Source: Octopus sinensis
Lineage: Eukaryota
Length of the DNA stretch: 64,000 nt
Reading direction: 5' to 3'
Assembly (NCBI RefSeq): GCF_006345805.1
Contig: NC_042997.1
Location: forward strand, 4,898,001-4,962,000
The translations under genes and the position numbers were made by a program. Below are positions 2-20,368 of the stretch, piece after piece; position 1 is the first letter of the stretch, and the number at the start of each line of letters is the position of its first letter. Under the pieces are notes generated by a model, which was given only the letters and a program-made list of their open reading frames with translations, was not told where the DNA came from and did not search any database.

Positions 2-121
2 AATGTTCTGGGTGCAAACTTTCAACCTTCATGGAACCTGACGGTCAAAAATTGGCATAGTGAGATTGCGGATTACCATTATGGAACAGAAACTGATGCA
101 ATGGTTGGACATTATACTCAG
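2..121 (+). CDS. CAP/CRISP-family protein, internal exon A (cut by window start), CAP core
   Basis: Reads NVLGANFQPSWNLTVKNWHSEIADYHYGTETDAMVGHYTQ, the CAP pattern W-x2-E-x3-Y-x-YG...GHYTQ. Ends at a CAG|GTAATT donor, phase 0. Confidence 0.9.
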
Positions 122-934
122 GTAATTCTGATATTCTGTTTTGTTATTAATTTTCTATCCATATTTTCCTTTACAATAAAACTTATTGAAATTTGTTCGC
201 GTTATCTAAAAGACTTTAGTAAACATATCAATAAATTATTTAAAAAAATAGTTACTGTGTCACTTTGTTTCTCTCTGCTATTGATATGTCCCATCCCTAA
301 CTGACACTAGCAAGGTCTAGTTATCCTTTATTATTTTCATTGAAATTAGTGCCCATCATGAAAGTGACACTGGGTTACAATATACGGAGCCTAGTATAGC
401 CCTTATAACTACCCATCTGGTGAGGGTAAGTCAAGTGCATGCACCAGACACGGCGGTCTCATATCAAGATGAACAGCGCATGTCCTTTCAGATGGGGACC
501 ACTTAGAATTTACTTCAGGTCGAGTAAACCATCCCACTTAGAAGATCGTTGAAAAAGGTTGTTGAAGGATGTTGAACGAAACAAATATTTTAAAGAGGTA
601 AAACATTCAAACACATAGCTATGATGGTCACTCGCCACCAGGGACATGCTCAACTGGTTAAGGTCAAACAACTGACATGCAAAATTGTGTTATTTTCTGT
701 AGAACATATCTAATACCAAGACCTAAATTTGTACCTGTTAAAATTTTCAATTAGTTAAGATGAGACCCCATGAGAGCCAGTGTAAGCTATTATATCATGG
801 TATTCAAATCTGTGGTATAGAGCAGAATGCATGCTGTAGCACATCTTTTATACAAAGACAAATTATGTATATAACACTTCTAAGCAGTTAAGATCAGAAT
901 CGATGACAGCCAATATTTCGTAATGTATCAGGGC

Positions 935-2944
935 ATTATCATCATCAACATCATTATAGAAGCAAAGCTCAAGTTTAGTCATTTTCCTGGCAGGATTCAC
1001 ATTTTCGGCAGTCTTTCAAGTGCTTAGAACCTTCTTGATAATCGTTGCACTTTTGTCTATTTCTTTTGCGTTTAGTTTAGTCCAGTATTTACCATGAAGG
1101 GGCTTTTCTTGCCATCGTTTTATCATGGTTCGTTGCTGTTCTATTTTTAGTTTGGATTTCATTTGTTTTATAGCTTTTCTTGTTTCTTCTTCTTCTACTT
1201 CTTCTCCTTCTTCTTCTTCTTCTTCTTCTTCTTCTTCTTTTTCTTCTTCTTCTTCTTCTTTCTTCTTCTTCTTCTTCTTCTTCTTCTTCATCTTCATCTT
1301 CTTCTTCTTCTTCTTCTTCTTCTTCTTTTCTTCTTCTTCTTCTTCTTCTCTTCTTCTTCTCTTCTTCTTCTTCTTCATCTTCATCTTCTTCTTCTTCTTC
1401 TTCTTCTTCTCTTCTTCTTCTTCTTCTTCTTCGTCTTCTTCTTCTTCTTCATATTTATTAGGTGATGTGATTTCTTATTTGTATTTGTCAGCTTCCTTAA
1501 ATACTGAGAACATTTTTTTTGTTTTGCTCGTGTTTTGTCGCTATTTGTATCAGTTTTCCTTCTTTCTGAAGTAGATATTTTTGCAGTCCTATGGTGGTTA
1601 TTTTATAGTAGTTTTCCAGGTGTATAAGGCCTCGACCACCTTCTATACGTTGTATATATAGTCTTTCATTGTCAGATTTTGGGTGATGCATCCTAGATCC
1701 TGTCATTATTTTTCTTGTTTTCCTATCTATTTTGGTCAGTTCATTTAGTGTCCAGTTAAGGATATTGTAGCTGTAAATTATAACTGGGACAGCTAAAGTG
1801 TTAATACCGATTTTCTTGTTATTAGCATTGAGCTCTGTTTTTAATATTGATCTAACTCGTCTATAATATTCTTTATTTACTTTCTCTTTCCTTTGTGTGT
1901 CTTGTGTCTTATTTAGTTCATGGGTTCCTAAGTATTTGTAAGTTTGGCTTTGGTCTAATTCTTTTATTTCATTGGTTTTATCTAGTGTGATGTTACTACT
2001 ATTAACTAGTTTTCATTTTTTCAGGGTTACTTTGGCGCATTTTTCTAATCCAAATTTCATATCTATTTATTTGGTAAATCCATGAACCGTCTTTAATAGT
2101 GTTTCCAGCTCTTTGTCATTTGCAGCGTATAGTTTTAGGTCATCCATATATAAACGGTGGCTGATCGTTTTGCCGTAATATATATATCTGCATCCAGTTC
2201 TATTTAGCATATCAGATAGAGGTGACAGTGCCAAGCAGAAAAGGAGTGGAGAGAGCGTGTCTCCCTGGAATATTCCTCTTCTAATAGGGATGGCTTTGGT
2301 TTTCCTGAGTTCCTCTTTTGTATGGAGCTGTAGCACTGTTTGCCATTTATTCTAAGAGTGCCCTATGAATTTTATAATTGTTGGTGCTACTTTGTTAATG
2401 GCTAGTGTTTCGAGGATCCATGTGTGGGGGATGCTATCAAACGCGTTTTTGCAGTCGATCCAGGCCATACTGAGGCCTTTCTTCTTTCTGTGGCTGTCTT
2501 CGGTTATGGCTTTATTAATCATTAGTTGATCTTTACAGCCATATGAGCCTTTGCAGCATCCTTTCTGCTCTTCTGAAAACAGGTTGTTTTCGTCCAGGGG
2601 CTTGTTCAACCTTTGCGATATCACTGCAGTAACTGCCTTGTACAGTGTAGGGAGAAGGGTTATTGGTCTGTAGTTTTCTGGTTTTGCTGTCTCGTTTGAT
2701 TTTGGAATTCAGATGGTTTTCCCCTTCGTGAGCCATTCAGGCATTGTCTCTGGCTCTGCTAGTATGTTGTTAAAGTTTTCAGCCAGCTTTTTGTGGATTC
2801 CTGTTAGATATTTCAACCAGAAGTTGGGGATCTTGTCATGCCCAAGTGCCTTCCAGTTGCTTAGTCGTTGCAGTGCCTGGGTGACCTCTTCAGTTGTTAT
2901 GGGGGTCCAAAGTTGCTCGGATGCTGAGTTTGATGTTTGAATAC

Positions 2945-2945
<1 letters not shown>
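935..2945 (-). mobile_element. R4/Dong-clade non-LTR retrotransposon relic (RT region, 5'-truncated, endonuclease apparently deleted)
   Basis: Frameshifted minus-strand fragments: NWKALGHDKIPNFWLK, EQKGCCKGSYGCKDQL, MAWIDCKNAFDSIPH, GIFQGDTLSPLLF, YMDDLKLYA, LYIQRIEGGRGL, WQEKPLHGKYW, terminal TIIKKVLST*. Confidence 0.88.
1186..1450. repeat. (CTT/GAA)n microsatellite inside the R4/Dong ORF
   Basis: About 265 bp of CTT repeats with recurring CATCTTCATC interruptions. Confidence 0.95.
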
Positions 2946-3010
<65 letters not shown>

Positions 3011-3062
3011 CGTTGTTGTTGTTGTTGTTGTTGTTGTTGTTATTATCTTTATTATTATTATA
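2942..3062. repeat. (ATT)n/(GTT)n microsatellite
   Basis: Visible trinucleotide array between two R4/Dong relics. Confidence 0.95.
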
Positions 3063-18900: not shown

Positions 18901-18953
<53 letters not shown>

Positions 18954-19430
18954 TATATATATATATAATTATGTGTATTAGCCTAATAATGTGCTATCCA
19001 AGGCTACACTTTTGTTAGCGGTAACCAAATGTTATCATATAGGACTTCTCCCGTTACTGGATATATCTGCCAATATCCTTAGAATATAAACAAGCGGGAT
19101 TGAAAAGATTCTATTATAAACCACATTAGTTGTTTCTACTCATAATTATCAGCTGTACGTTACTGAATGTTACATAAACTATACTCAATATTATATTAAT
19201 ATACATGCGCATATGTGCATGACTAGTGTCAAAATACTGCTATACCATATTTAGTTTCTCCATATTTTATAGCCGTCTGAAATACACTTTTAGCTTCCGT
19301 CTATTCACTAGGATCCGGTGGGTCCAAGACTGACAACTATTATCGTTACAGTATTTAATGAGGATATTCATTATATGGAACACTTATTTTTTCGTTCATG
19401 TTTAATCAAATTCTTCAATATTTTATGCAG

Positions 19431-19529
19431 ATTGTAATGGCAAATCTTGTCAGTACGGTGGCATGCTTGATATAAATACTTGCCAATGTACTTGTTACCA
19501 ACTAGCAACCGGAGATGAGTGTGCGGAAT
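19431..19529 (+). CDS. CAP/CRISP-family protein, exon D (EGF-like module)
   Basis: Acceptor TTTTATGCAG|, donor AT|GTAAGT. 99 bp, phase 1-1. Reads (D)CNGKSCQYGGMLDINTCQCTCYQLATGDECAE, an EGF-like 6-Cys spacing. Confidence 0.9.
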
Positions 19530-20249
19530 GTAAGTTGCCATTTTTTTCTTTTAGTTAACCAATTAACTTAGTATTCAAGTTCATATTTTTCTTTTCCCTA
19601 CAGAGTATAAATATGTTTTTCTTGAACCTTCATAATGATTTATGTGTTTTGTAAACTATATAAGCCATATTCAATTCATATGTGTATTTGATATTATTCA
19701 ATTAATACTGAGATATTGCTGAATGTTCGTTTGAGAAAAAGTGAGGGTTTGTTGAAGAAAAAAGTATGCATCATATTGCAATGAATGCTTATTAAAACAG
19801 CTCGTTCGGGGAATTAGTTTCGCAAACAGCTGTACAAGCAAATTGTCGAGGATATTTTACCGGTGTAGGCGGATTGCTGAAAATGTGAACTTTATATTTG
19901 ATACTCCGATATTATTGAGCAATCATGTTCCTTCCTATTATTTATCATAGTTAGTAGTAATAAAATGTCAAAATGTATTACATATTTCACTTGTGGTGAT
20001 CTGAAAGATCATTAACTCTTAGCAGTGAACAAAATCTCGATTTACTCACTGAAGAAATTATCGTTAATTGTATGTAAAAGATTATGCATGAAATGTCTCG
20101 CATTATGAATGTATTAAATTTCTTTGATATATCTTAGACTTTTTGTATATCTATTAATATCCTCTGAAATGAATGTTGTTGATTTTACGAAATTTAAAAT
20201 GCAATTGAAACGATTTCAATAGGAATTACAATTTTGGTTTCTCTTTTAG

Positions 20250-20368
20250 TGACATGCAAACCTGATTATACTTTCTGTGAGCATTACAAAGATACCTTTT
20301 GCGATGTTAAGTATATGTACTCATTCGCAAGATATTGTCCTAATATGTGTAACTCATGCGCCAAATGA
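20250..20368 (+). CDS. CAP/CRISP-family protein, terminal coding exon E (ShK-like domain)
   Basis: Acceptor TTTCTCTTTTAG|, phase 1. Reads (L)TCKPDYTFCEHYKDTFCDVKYMYSFARYCPNMCNSCAK then TGA at 20366-20368. Cys spacing C-x6-C-x7-C-x11-C-x3-C-x2-C. Confidence 0.9.

What the first reader, a model, noticed from the sequence alone, without database searches (positions are those of the whole stretch)
2..20368. Hidden five-exon CAP + EGF-like + ShK-like gene, a candidate cephalopod venom or salivary protein
Seen: five short exons (89-120 bp) spread over 20 kb, none complete in the ORF track, with compatible phases (0, 2, 1, 1). They give ...VGHYTQ|EIYWDAKLIGCGGAYCPNSHLKYIYVCDYYTG|QDSTLFPY...STLCD|CNGKSCQYGGMLDINTCQCTC...DECAEL|TCKPDYTFC...CPNMCNSCAK*. 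Three N-glycosylation sequons (NLT, NAT, NST). Established: CAP/CRISP proteins are recurrent venom components, including Conus Tex31/Mr30-type proteins and cephalopod posterior salivary gland CAPs. Vertebrate CRISPs join hinge directly to an ShK-like domain; here an EGF-like module intervenes. Inference: secreted protein, possibly a toxin. The N-terminal exons lie upstream of the window, so secretion is not shown.
Basis: partly seen in the sequence, partly recalled or inferred. Interest (0 to 1): 0.78.

Follow-up and report, generated by a model that had tools for sequence, protein, structure and literature searches.

The report
Octopus CAP/CRISP-like secreted protein gene
The five exons are real and form the 3' part of an already annotated octopus gene for a secreted CRISP-like protein of a known molluscan family. 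It is evolving unusually fast between two sibling octopus species, but nothing yet shows that it is a venom component.

Summary
Five + strand exons (1-121, 10031-10125, 12844-12932, 19431-19529, 20250-20368; phases 0, 2, 1, 1) splice into 173 residues identical to the C-terminus of a 293-aa protein already in NCBI/UniRef. The window maps to assembly GCA_006345805.1, which I believe is Octopus sinensis. The first exon is cut by the window edge. One intron uses a GC donor.

The full gene has eight coding exons over 39 kb, and the upstream exons supply a signal-peptide-like N-terminus. Only the CAP domain passes Pfam. The tail is a hinge with two of the usual four cysteines, then an EGF-like module carried by one symmetric phase 1-1 exon, then a six-cysteine ShK-like module. 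This matches the published molluscan "CAP-ShK type II" family (Conus Mr30/Tex31, Colubraria CreCAP-ShK4-7), so the intervening EGF-like module is not new.

New here: against the collinear O. vulgaris orthologue there are 24 nonsynonymous and 1 synonymous differences. That is 2.5 times the intron substitution rate (p = 7e-5), with the signal peptide and all cysteines conserved, which indicates positive selection.

The tissue of expression is unknown. The CAP proteins visible in the stored O. vulgaris salivary-gland proteome tables map to other paralogues. The venom role stays untested.

The parts
1..121 (+). 3' 121 nt of coding exon 4 (true exon is 140 nt and starts 20 nt upstream of the window). 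Encodes ...NVLGANFQPSWNLTVKNWHSEIADYHYGTETDAMVGHYTQ, the CAP-domain core with the GHYTQ motif (107-121) and sequon NLT (35-43). Donor is CAG|gtaatt, phase 0.
   Evidence: Pfam CAP
10031..10125 (+). Coding exon 5 (95 nt): EIYWDAKLIGCGGAYCPNSHLKYIYVCDYYT(G), the end of the CAP domain including the YVCDY motif (10103-10117). Acceptor is aacag|; the donor is the non-canonical GC (gcaagt at 10126-10131). Ends in phase 2.
   Evidence: The GC donor is shared with O. vulgaris and is GT in O. bimaculoides.
12844..12932 (+). Coding exon 6 (89 nt): QDSTLFPYTLANATHQLTTCPRPANSTLC, the hinge. It keeps only 2 of the 4 cysteines of the CRISP hinge. Sequons NAT (12878-12886) and NST (12917-12925). Ends in phase 1.
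19431..19529 (+). Coding exon 7 (99 nt), a symmetric phase 1-1 exon that encodes exactly the EGF-like module (D)CNGKSCQYGGMLDINTCQCTCYQLATGDECAE(L). It has six cysteines with spacing C-x4-C-x10-C-x-C-x-C-x8-C.
   Evidence: EGF-only sub-threshold PDB matches. Bridging relative P0170 carries Pfam EGF_Teneurin on the homologous module. AF2 pLDDT is 73-88 across residues 201-250, which include this module.
20250..20368 (+). Coding part of the last exon (119 nt, TGA at 20366-20368): TCKPDYTFCEHYKDTFCDVKYMYSFARYCPNMCNSCAK. This is the six-cysteine ShK-like module (C-x6-C-x7-C-x11-C-x3-C-x2-C) in the position of the CRISP ion-channel-regulatory domain.
   Evidence: Profile-profile match to the vertebrate domain is in register but weak. 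No Pfam ShK or Crisp hit. AF2 pLDDT 40-47.
20369..20800 (+). Probable 3' UTR. Candidate polyadenylation hexamers: ATTAAA at 20446 and 20455, AATAAA at 20666 and 20791. The true transcript end is not determined.
   Evidence: sequence inspection only

Best explanation
The region holds the last five of eight coding exons of a single-copy, already annotated octopus gene. The window maps to GCA_006345805.1, chromosome CM016859.1, at about 4.898 Mb. The gene encodes a 293-aa secreted protein of the molluscan CAP-ShK type II (Mr30/Tex31-like) branch of the CAP superfamily. Its layout is: signal peptide; a short N-terminal extension with two cysteines; the CAP/PR-1 domain; a hinge reduced to one presumed disulfide; a teneurin/tenascin-type EGF-like module on its own phase 1-1 exon; and a C-terminal six-cysteine ShK-like module where vertebrate CRISPs have their ion-channel-regulatory domain. 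Shown: the gene structure, its identity to the database protein, orthology in three more octopods, CAP membership, and nonsynonymous change faster than neutral on a fixed cysteine and signal-peptide scaffold. Inferred, by analogy with CRISPs: the protein is secreted, the CAP domain acts as a stable scaffold, and the EGF-like and ShK-like pair acts as the recognition surface for an extracellular target such as an ion channel or receptor. Because change exceeds the neutral rate, that target probably co-evolves with it (prey, pathogen or gamete). The tissue is unknown. I put salivary or venom use at about 0.25-0.3, and reproductive, immune or epithelial secretion together at about 0.6.
For: The exons, phases and open frame were verified. 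The spliced peptide is 100% identical to P0001. The full eight-exon model reproduces P0001 exactly. P0001 is present in NCBI, UniRef and nr. Pfam CAP scores 64.6 bits. The best Foldseek PDB hits are snake-venom CRISPs (1rc9, E = 4e-16, rmsd 2.2 A over 181 columns).

Orthologues with all splice sites intact exist in O. vulgaris and O. bimaculoides, and Argonauta has a 51%-identical protein named 'Mr30-like'. The tail aligns cysteine for cysteine with Colubraria CreCAP-ShK4 and with oyster 'Mr30' proteins, a rotifer, a hemichordate and a sea cucumber. The tail profile finds 505 cluster representatives, and 81 of 100 sampled carry CAP. The family and its architecture are described in PMC6409789.

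Selection against O. vulgaris: 24 nonsynonymous and 1 synonymous differences (dN 0.035, dS 0.006). Introns of the same gene differ at 453 of 33,543 sites (1.35%); Fisher p = 6.6e-5 for nonsynonymous sites against introns. Coding changes are 20 transversions to 5 transitions, against 223:230 in introns (p = 0.003). The signal-peptide exon is 100% identical, and all 20 mature cysteines are conserved in the three Octopus species compared. Changes fall on both lineages.
Against: No transcript or proteomic evidence for this gene was reachable. None of the three octopod protein clusters examined (O. sinensis, O. bimaculoides, Argonauta) holds a transcript-derived member, whereas the oyster homologue's cluster holds several. 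Pfam does not recognise the EGF-like or ShK-like modules in this protein. The ShK-like module is modelled at pLDDT 40-47 and the tail-only model at pLDDT 50, so the folds of the tail are not established. The selection test rests on one species pair and 25 substitutions. dS is low, and the binomial test against site proportions alone gives only p = 0.03. The target-binding mechanism is by analogy only. One of the four CRISP metal-site residues is not conserved: the Glu75 equivalent is Asp, Val or Tyr in octopods (numbering from PMC7150914).
Confidence: 0.8

Rival explanations
1. One reading: the protein is a posterior-salivary-gland (venom) component, secreted into saliva, whose cysteine-rich tail acts on prey ion channels or receptors.
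For: The N-terminus is signal-peptide-like. The closest solved structures are snake-venom CRISPs. Type II relatives are highly expressed in the Conus venom duct and the Colubraria salivary gland (PMC6409789). CAP proteins are among the most abundant families in the O. vulgaris salivary-gland proteome (PMC7693380). The pattern of a conserved signal peptide and cysteine frame with fast-changing other residues is the classic toxin pattern.
Against: The salivary-gland CAP protein groups visible in the stored supplement map to other O. bimaculoides proteins (XP_014790560.1, XP_014788268.1) and to H. maculosa ACJ22636.1, not to the orthologue XP_014784375.1. That file is truncated, so absence is not proven. 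The blue-ringed-octopus gland CAP falls in the other clade, type I. The gene is single copy in each octopod retrieved, not an expanded toxin family. No transcript-derived copies are in the protein collection. Oyster type II genes are mantle-specific. The database name 'cysteine-rich venom protein' appears to come from sequence similarity only (my reading of an automatic product name).
Confidence: 0.27
2. The protein is a non-venom secreted CAP protein used in reproduction (gamete or spermatophore interaction), in innate immunity, or in skin, mantle or sucker epithelial secretion. Its fast evolution would then be driven by sexual or host-pathogen conflict.
For: Positive selection fits these roles equally well. 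From my own knowledge, vertebrate CRISPs are mainly reproductive-tract and immune proteins; the review of this (Gibbs et al. 2008) is cited in PMC7693380. Oyster type II genes are mantle-specific, and the family predates molluscan venoms, with members in non-predatory bivalves, a rotifer, a hemichordate and a sea cucumber. The gene is absent from the visible salivary-gland proteome hits.
Against: There is no direct evidence for any of these tissues. The same lack of assembled transcripts applies here too.
Confidence: 0.55
3. The gene is decaying or unconstrained (a pseudogene in the making), and the many amino-acid changes reflect relaxed selection, not adaptation.
For: dN/dS against O. bimaculoides is high for a conserved gene (0.58). 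No transcript-derived copies were found. The O. vulgaris annotation is chimeric.
Against: The reading frame, all seven splice-site pairs and all 20 mature cysteines are intact in three Octopus species, and the protein is intact in Argonauta. Nonsynonymous divergence is 2.5 times the intron rate, which relaxation alone cannot produce. The signal-peptide exon is identical between the two sibling species. dN/dS below 1 over the longer branch shows that purifying selection persists.
Confidence: 0.03

Closest known systems
Molluscan CAP-ShK type II proteins (Colubraria/Cumia CreCAP-ShK4-7; Conus Mr30 and Tex31), as defined in PMC6409789
   Same: Signal peptide, CAP domain, then a cysteine-rich tail that combines EGF-like motifs with poorly recognisable ShKT motifs. 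CreCAP-ShK4 (P0009) is retrieved at E = 7.6e-56 and its first tail unit aligns cysteine for cysteine. The cluster of the oyster relative P0010 holds proteins that NCBI names 'Mr30' and 'Mr30-like', and the Argonauta relative is named 'Mr30-like'.
   Different: The octopod proteins have a single EGF-like + ShK-like unit, whereas Colubraria type II proteins duplicate it. They have also lost two of the four hinge cysteines. Tissue of expression is unknown for the octopus gene. I did not fetch the Conus sequences, and no tree including type I members was built.
Octopus bimaculoides XP_014784375.1 'cysteine-rich venom protein' (UniProt A0A0L8G3R1) and the unannotated-as-such O. vulgaris orthologue
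   Same: Collinear orthologous loci with the same eight coding exons and splice sites. Identity is 66-69% to O. bimaculoides and about 93% to O. vulgaris (21 amino-acid differences in 293).
   Different: O. bimaculoides uses a GT donor where O. sinensis and O. vulgaris use GC, and it starts at the second Met. The O. vulgaris database model (P0006, 460 aa) skips the GC-donor exon and is fused to a downstream transposon ORF.
Vertebrate CRISPs, especially snake-venom CRISPs (stecrisp 1RC9, triflin 1WVR, natrin 1XX5)
   Same: Best sequence and fold matches. CAP domain, then hinge, then a C-terminal six-cysteine domain in the same order. The Glu96 and His115 metal-site equivalents are conserved (numbering from PMC7150914).
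   Different: A 30-odd-residue EGF-like module is inserted between the hinge and the last domain. The hinge has 2 cysteines, not 4. The last module ends C-x3-C-x2-C, not C-x3-C-x-C. Pfam Crisp (PF08562) does not match. The mature protein has 20 cysteines, not 16.
CAP proteins reported from cephalopod posterior salivary glands (e.g. Hapalochlaena maculosa ACJ22636; O. vulgaris gland proteome CAP groups)
   Same: Same superfamily, same animal group, secreted.
   Different: The Hapalochlaena protein falls in the type I clade. The O. vulgaris gland CAP groups seen map to other O. bimaculoides genes. These look like paralogues of the gene in the window, not the same gene.

Membership tests
CAP superfamily (PF00188) | Match to the Pfam CAP model above its gathering score | tested here: met
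   27.8 bits for the window-encoded part (profile positions 67-117) and 64.6 bits for the full protein (positions 1-117); cut-off 21.1.
CAP superfamily (PF00188) | Alpha-beta-alpha sandwich fold | tested here: met
Foldseek top hits are CRISP, GLIPR1 and Ag5 structures, with E down to 4e-16. This is a predicted structure, not a solved one.
CAP superfamily (PF00188) | Conserved His/Glu/Glu/His metal-binding site (His60, Glu75, Glu96, His115 in triflin numbering; PMC7150914) | tested here: inconclusive
   His66, Glu141 and His157 align with His60, Glu96 and His115. The Glu75 equivalent is Asp84 here, Val in O. bimaculoides and Tyr in Argonauta.
Vertebrate-type CRISP (CAP + hinge + Crisp/ICR domain) | Four-cysteine hinge with two disulfides | tested here: not met
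   Only the second and fourth hinge cysteines remain (TTCPRPANSTLC). The first and third are Leu and Ala.
Vertebrate-type CRISP (CAP + hinge + Crisp/ICR domain) | ICR domain follows the hinge directly; Pfam Crisp PF08562 match | tested here: not met
   An EGF-like module lies between them. There is no PF08562 hit at E up to 10. hhalign of the last module against vertebrate ICR gives probability 11.8% and E = 0.0025, in register.
Molluscan CAP-ShK type II (Mr30/Tex31-like; PMC6409789) | Signal peptide + CAP + C-terminal region mixing EGF-like and poorly recognisable ShKT-like motifs | tested here: met
   Architecture; family definition.
Molluscan CAP-ShK type II (Mr30/Tex31-like; PMC6409789) | Full-length sequence similarity to named members | tested here: met
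   CreCAP-ShK4 at E = 7.6e-56 with 87% coverage. Oyster proteins named 'Mr30' and 'Mr30-like' sit in the cluster of hit P0010, and the Argonauta hit is named 'Mr30-like'.
Molluscan CAP-ShK type II (Mr30/Tex31-like; PMC6409789) | Phylogenetic placement inside the type II clade and not type I | not tested
ShKT domain (PF01549) | Six cysteines ending C-x3-C-x2-C | tested here: met
   C257-x6-C264-x7-C272-x11-C284-x3-C288-x2-C291, invariant or nearly invariant across 100 relatives.
ShKT domain (PF01549) | Match to the ShK profile | tested here: not met
   No hit at E up to 10 for this protein or its isolated module. No hit on the tail module in the relatives scanned individually. The one ShK hit that was located (P0289) is an extra N-terminal domain; two other ShK hits among 100 relatives were not located.
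ShKT domain (PF01549) | ShKT fold and 1-6, 2-4, 3-5 disulfide topology | tested here: inconclusive
   pLDDT is 40-47 in the full-length model and about 45 in the tail model, with short helices only.
EGF-like domain | Match to an EGF profile | tested here: inconclusive
   No Pfam EGF hit for this protein. The tail profile against PDB returns mainly EGF domains and EGF-like repeat proteins, all below threshold (factor IX EGF1 E = 0.14, EGF/TGF-alpha 0.16, Notch1 0.42). In relative P0170 the homologous module is covered by Pfam EGF_Teneurin (51.9 bits, cut-off 24.3).
EGF-like domain | Six cysteines in canonical spacing, with the central beta-hairpin | tested here: inconclusive
   There are six cysteines, but as C-x4-C-x10-C-x-C-x-C-x8-C. 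In the HMMER alignment the canonical third cysteine is missing and an extra one follows the fifth. A hairpin is predicted in both models, with pLDDT 73-88 in the full-length one.
EGF-like domain | Module carried by a symmetric phase 1-1 exon (typical of shuffled extracellular modules) | tested here: met
   Exon 19431-19529 starts and ends in phase 1 and encodes the module exactly. The phase 1-1 rule itself is from my own knowledge.
Venom / salivary toxin | Expression in, and secretion from, the posterior salivary gland | not testable with these tools
   No read data were available. The gland proteome supplement is truncated and shows other CAP paralogues.
Venom / salivary toxin | Accelerated evolution of the mature protein on a conserved signal peptide and cysteine frame | tested here: met
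   This feature is not specific to venoms.

The most novel reading that the evidence does not exclude
This single-copy CAP-ShK type II gene could be an adaptively diverging effector, salivary or reproductive. Its EGF-like + ShK-like pair would recognise a co-evolving target, and its burst of amino-acid change would mark functional divergence between the sibling species O. sinensis and O. vulgaris. That would make it a tractable case of a toxin or gamete-recognition protein changing during very recent octopus speciation. The same two-module unit may be a mobile 'supermodule' that also exists as CAP-less tandem arrays.
Probability: 0.25. Interest if true: 0.55.

Novelty: already known. Interest (0 to 1): 0.3.

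Why it matters
As a gene discovery it adds little. The protein is already in public databases and its architecture was described for molluscs in 2019. Three things are still useful. First, there is a clear signal of positive selection between two sibling octopus species on a fixed cysteine scaffold, which singles out this CAP gene for functional work. Second, the current O. vulgaris gene model is chimeric: it skips the exon with the GC donor and is fused to a transposon ORF. Proteomic or expression studies that rely on that model would partly miss this protein. Third, the exon-module correspondence supports an exon-shuffling origin of the difference between invertebrate type II CAP proteins and vertebrate CRISPs. 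The EGF-like module sits on one phase 1-1 exon, and the EGF-like + six-cysteine unit recurs as a repeat.

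Tried and rejected
A second CAP copy or tandem array in the window was rejected: tblastn with the O. sinensis and O. bimaculoides proteins finds only the five exons.

Pfam recognition of the tail failed. There were no ShK, Crisp or EGF hits for the protein or its isolated modules, and none on the tail module in the relatives scanned individually.

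The tail-only AlphaFold model had pLDDT 50. Its Foldseek search gave nothing significant; the best hits, at E = 2.8-4.3, were to proteins that contain EGF domains, and I do not use them as evidence.

The third word-indexed homology search, with the tail profile, returned only two proteins. The exhaustive representative search was needed instead.

A literature search for the orthologue's accessions and for the run accession of the closest transcript-derived relatives found nothing. The source organism of P0003 and P0004 therefore stays unknown.

Three cephalopod venom or genome papers held no usable information on CAP genes.

The pseudogene reading was considered and rejected (see rivals).

tRNA and Rfam scans of the window were empty.

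Full report
**1. Checking the observation**

Reading the DNA around them and joining at AG acceptors and GT or GC donors gives these exons:
- 2-121 (the exon occupies bases 1-121)
- 10031-10125
- 12844-12932
- 19431-19529
- 20250-20368 (stop codon TGA at 20366-20368)

The lengths are 120, 95, 89, 99 and 119 nt. Cumulative phases are 0, 2, 1, 1, and the open frame has 173 codons and 17 cysteines. The intron after 10125 starts GCAAGT, so it is a GC-AG intron. The first exon is cut by the window edge. The three sequons are at 35-43 (NLT), 12878-12886 (NAT) and 12917-12925 (NST).

**2. The gene is real and already annotated**

The spliced peptide is 100% identical over its whole length to the C-terminus of a 293-aa database protein, P0001. 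That protein is held by NCBI, UniRef and nr. It is encoded on a 213-Mb chromosome record, GCA_006345805.1 CM016859.1. To my knowledge this is the Octopus sinensis assembly. The organism name comes from memory; the low divergence from O. vulgaris reported below fits a sibling species.

Window base 1 corresponds to base 28721 of the fetched locus L001. A search over splice boundaries reproduces P0001 exactly with eight coding exons spread over 39 kb. All introns have AG acceptors, and all donors are GT except the one GC.

The three-and-a-bit exons upstream of the window encode MHTRIIMFQLLQFFLLFQLFFFAYG|SDS... This has a hydrophobic core followed by small residues at positions -3 and -1, which reads as a signal peptide. 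That is inference; no predictor was run. AlphaFold models it as a helix. The predicted mature protein is 268 aa, about 30.6 kDa, pI 5.1, with 20 cysteines and four sequons.

**3. Domains**

Pfam recognises only the CAP domain. It scores 27.8 bits for the window part and 64.6 bits for the full protein, against a cut-off of 21.1. The best PDB sequence matches are snake-venom CRISPs: stecrisp at 8.7e-11 and triflin at 1.3e-10.

An AlphaFold model built on a 25-sequence alignment has mean pLDDT 83. Foldseek against the PDB returns CRISPs first (1rc9, E = 4e-16, rmsd 2.2 A over 181 columns), then GLIPR1 and insect antigen-5 proteins.

Using triflin numbering from PMC7150914, the Glu96 and His115 metal-site residues align with Glu141 and His157, and His60 aligns with His66. 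The Glu75 equivalent is Asp in this protein, Val in O. bimaculoides and Tyr in Argonauta.

**4. The tail**

After the hinge, vertebrate proteins go straight to the six-cysteine C-terminal domain. The octopus protein and its invertebrate relatives carry an extra segment of about 30 residues, DCNG..C.NGG.LD..TC.C.C....G..C. Each part was examined in turn.

*Hinge.* The octopod hinge keeps only the second and fourth of the four CRISP hinge cysteines. Other invertebrate relatives keep all four. From memory of CRISP crystal structures, the hinge disulfides pair 1-3 and 2-4. If so, exactly one disulfide has been lost as a pair. I did not test this.

*EGF-like module.*
- It is encoded exactly by the 99-nt exon 19431-19529, which begins and ends in phase 1. 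This is the arrangement expected for shuffled extracellular modules; that rule is general knowledge.
- Pfam EGF models do not hit the octopus protein.
- A profile of 13 family tails searched against the PDB gives only sub-threshold matches. The top ones are EGF domains or EGF-like repeat proteins in the usual register: factor IX EGF1 (E = 0.14), an EGF/TGF-alpha chimera (0.16), Notch1 (0.42) and mastigoneme EGF-like repeats (0.078-0.33).
- A bridging relative helps. P0170 was found with the tail profile (E = 4.7e-33). It is a CAP-less protein made of seven tandem copies of the same two-module unit. Pfam calls its copy of this module EGF_Teneurin at 51.9 bits (cut-off 24.3).

I therefore accept 'EGF-like' as the best label. 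The caveat is that the cysteine spacing (C-x4-C-x10-C-x-C-x-C-x8-C) is not canonical.

*ShK-like module.*
- The last exon encodes C-x6-C-x7-C-x11-C-x3-C-x2-C. This is the ShKT cysteine pattern, and it occupies the position of the CRISP ion-channel-regulatory domain.
- Neither Pfam ShK nor Pfam Crisp matches it, here or in any relative scanned individually. The one located ShK hit, in P0289, is an additional N-terminal domain. Two further ShK hits among 100 relatives were not located.
- A profile-profile comparison with vertebrate CRISP C-terminal domains aligns in register but weakly (probability 11.8%, E = 0.0025).
- The structure models are not confident there.

'ShK-like' is thus a pattern-and-position label, in line with the published description 'poorly recognisable ShKT'.

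**5. Which family**

A profile search retrieves these relatives:
- O. bimaculoides XP_014784375.1, 'cysteine-rich venom protein' (66-69% identity)
- an Argonauta hians protein named 'Mr30-like' (51%)
- an O. vulgaris model
- Colubraria CreCAP-ShK4
- oyster proteins named 'Mr30' and 'Mr30-like' by NCBI
- other bivalve proteins, and rotifer, hemichordate and sea-cucumber proteins

All of these share the same tail.

The exhaustive search with the tail profile finds 505 cluster representatives at E up to 1e-3 and 225 at E up to 1e-10. Of 100 sampled, 81 carry a CAP domain.

Gerdol et al. 2019 (PMC6409789) define exactly this group as molluscan CAP-ShK type II: CAP plus EGF-like plus poorly recognisable ShKT. 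They place Conus Mr30 and Tex31 in it and infer that it was present in the molluscan ancestor. They note that oyster type II genes are mantle-specific. They also place the salivary-gland CAP of the blue-ringed octopus in the other clade, type I. The 'intervening EGF-like module' is therefore a known family trait, not a cephalopod novelty.

**6. Comparative genomics and selection**

I fetched the loci of the O. vulgaris and O. bimaculoides proteins. The O. vulgaris locus is collinear with the O. sinensis locus over about 59 kb at 96-99% identity, so the genes are orthologues. All eight exons and their splice sites are conserved in both species. The GC donor is shared with O. vulgaris and is GT in O. 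bimaculoides. Both species have intact reading frames.

O. sinensis compared with O. vulgaris:

| Measure | Result |
|---|---|
| Nonsynonymous : synonymous differences | 24 : 1 |
| dN / dS | 0.035 / 0.006 (ratio about 6) |
| Binomial test against site proportions | p = 0.03 |
| Intron divergence in the same gene | 453 of 33,543 aligned sites (1.35%) |
| Nonsynonymous sites against introns | 2.5 times faster, Fisher p = 6.6e-5 |
| Synonymous sites against introns | no difference |
| Transversions : transitions, coding | 20 : 5 |
| Transversions : transitions, introns | 223 : 230 (p = 0.003 against coding) |
| Coding changes in CpG context | 3 |

By outgroup comparison the changes fall on both lineages, and half of them are at sites that also differ in O. 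bimaculoides. The signal-peptide exon is 100% identical. All 20 mature cysteines are conserved in the three species. The ShK-like module changes fastest, with 8 nonsynonymous changes in 38 codons. Against O. bimaculoides, dN/dS is 0.58.

A rate above neutral cannot come from relaxed constraint alone, so positive selection on the mature protein is the best reading. It rests on one species pair and 25 substitutions.

**7. Function**

Three things are shown: a conserved, intact gene for a secretion-type protein; CAP membership; and adaptive change on a fixed disulfide scaffold.

By analogy with CRISPs, I infer that the CAP domain is a stable scaffold and that the C-terminal modules are the recognition surface for an extracellular target that itself evolves. 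In CRISPs the C-terminal domain is implicated in recognising ion channels (PMC7150914).

The tissue is not known, and the evidence bearing on the venom reading is mixed.
- For: the signal peptide; the fast-changing mature region; type II relatives in the Conus venom duct and Colubraria salivary gland; and the abundance of CAP proteins in the O. vulgaris gland proteome.
- Against: the gland CAP groups visible in that paper's stored supplement map to other O. bimaculoides genes (XP_014790560.1, XP_014788268.1) and to H. maculosa ACJ22636.1. The orthologue's accession is absent, although the file is truncated.
- Against: the gene is single copy in each octopod retrieved.
- Against: none of the three octopod clusters examined holds a transcript-derived sequence, whereas the oyster homologue's cluster holds several.

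I therefore give the venom or salivary reading about 0.27. A non-venom secreted role (reproductive, immune or epithelial) gets about 0.55, and decay about 0.03.

**8. Verdict**

As a kind of thing it is already known. The worthwhile residue is the selection signal, the corrected O. vulgaris gene model and the exon-module correspondence.

Noticed in passing
window 40684-41193 (+) and frameshifted continuation to about 42600; Pfam-positive piece at 41600-41938: A degenerate piggyBac-like transposase copy (PF13843 DDE_Tnp_1_7, 47.9 bits) lies 20 kb downstream of the CAP gene. Its first ORF (169 aa) matches the foreign C-terminal part of the O. vulgaris database protein P0006.
   Followed up: yes
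L003 (O. vulgaris OX597814.1), exons at 26043-63617: The O. vulgaris gene model P0006 (460 aa) is chimeric. It skips the exon with the GC donor, drops the end of the last exon and runs on into the transposon ORF. The locus in fact holds an intact 293-aa orthologue. That exact sequence is not in the protein collection.
   Followed up: yes
window 9742-10022: A (TTA)n microsatellite of about 94 units ends 8 nt before the acceptor of the exon at 10031, so it effectively forms that intron's 3' end. (TTC)n of about 90 units lies at 1184-1450, and many (TA)n and (TG)n arrays lie in the introns and downstream.
   Followed up: no
window 24346-24828 (-), 15487-15963 (-), 2709-3131 (-), 46916-47759 (+), 62598-62966 (+), 28524-28922 (-), 5014-5400 (-): These ORFs look by eye like fragments of retrotransposon or transposon proteins: endonuclease/reverse transcriptase, possibly a GIY-YIG element, and possibly a hAT-like piece. 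Only 24346-24828 gave a weak Pfam hit (Exo_endo_phos_2, E = 0.004). The others had no Pfam hit.
   Followed up: partly
protein P0170 (469 aa; source unknown) and Colubraria CreCAP-ShK4 (P0009): The EGF-like + six-cysteine 'CP.MCG.C' pair behaves as one unit. P0170 consists of seven tandem copies without any CAP domain, and CreCAP-ShK4 carries a second copy. This suggests a two-module supermodule that duplicates and moves as a block.
   Followed up: partly
window 12902-12931 (hinge) and alignments A2 and A3: Octopus and Argonauta proteins have lost the first and third of the four CRISP hinge cysteines. The closest transcript-derived relatives (P0003, P0004) and the bivalve, rotifer and gastropod proteins in the tail alignment keep them, which points to loss of one hinge disulfide in the octopod lineage.
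   Followed up: partly
window 10126-10127 and L004 36015-36016: The GC donor of this intron is shared by O. sinensis and O. vulgaris, but it is GT in O. bimaculoides. It is therefore probably a recent T-to-C change that left the rest of the donor consensus (AAGT) intact.
   Followed up: yes
whole window: No tRNA genes and no Rfam family reaching its gathering score on either strand. G+C is 31-40% throughout.
   Followed up: yes
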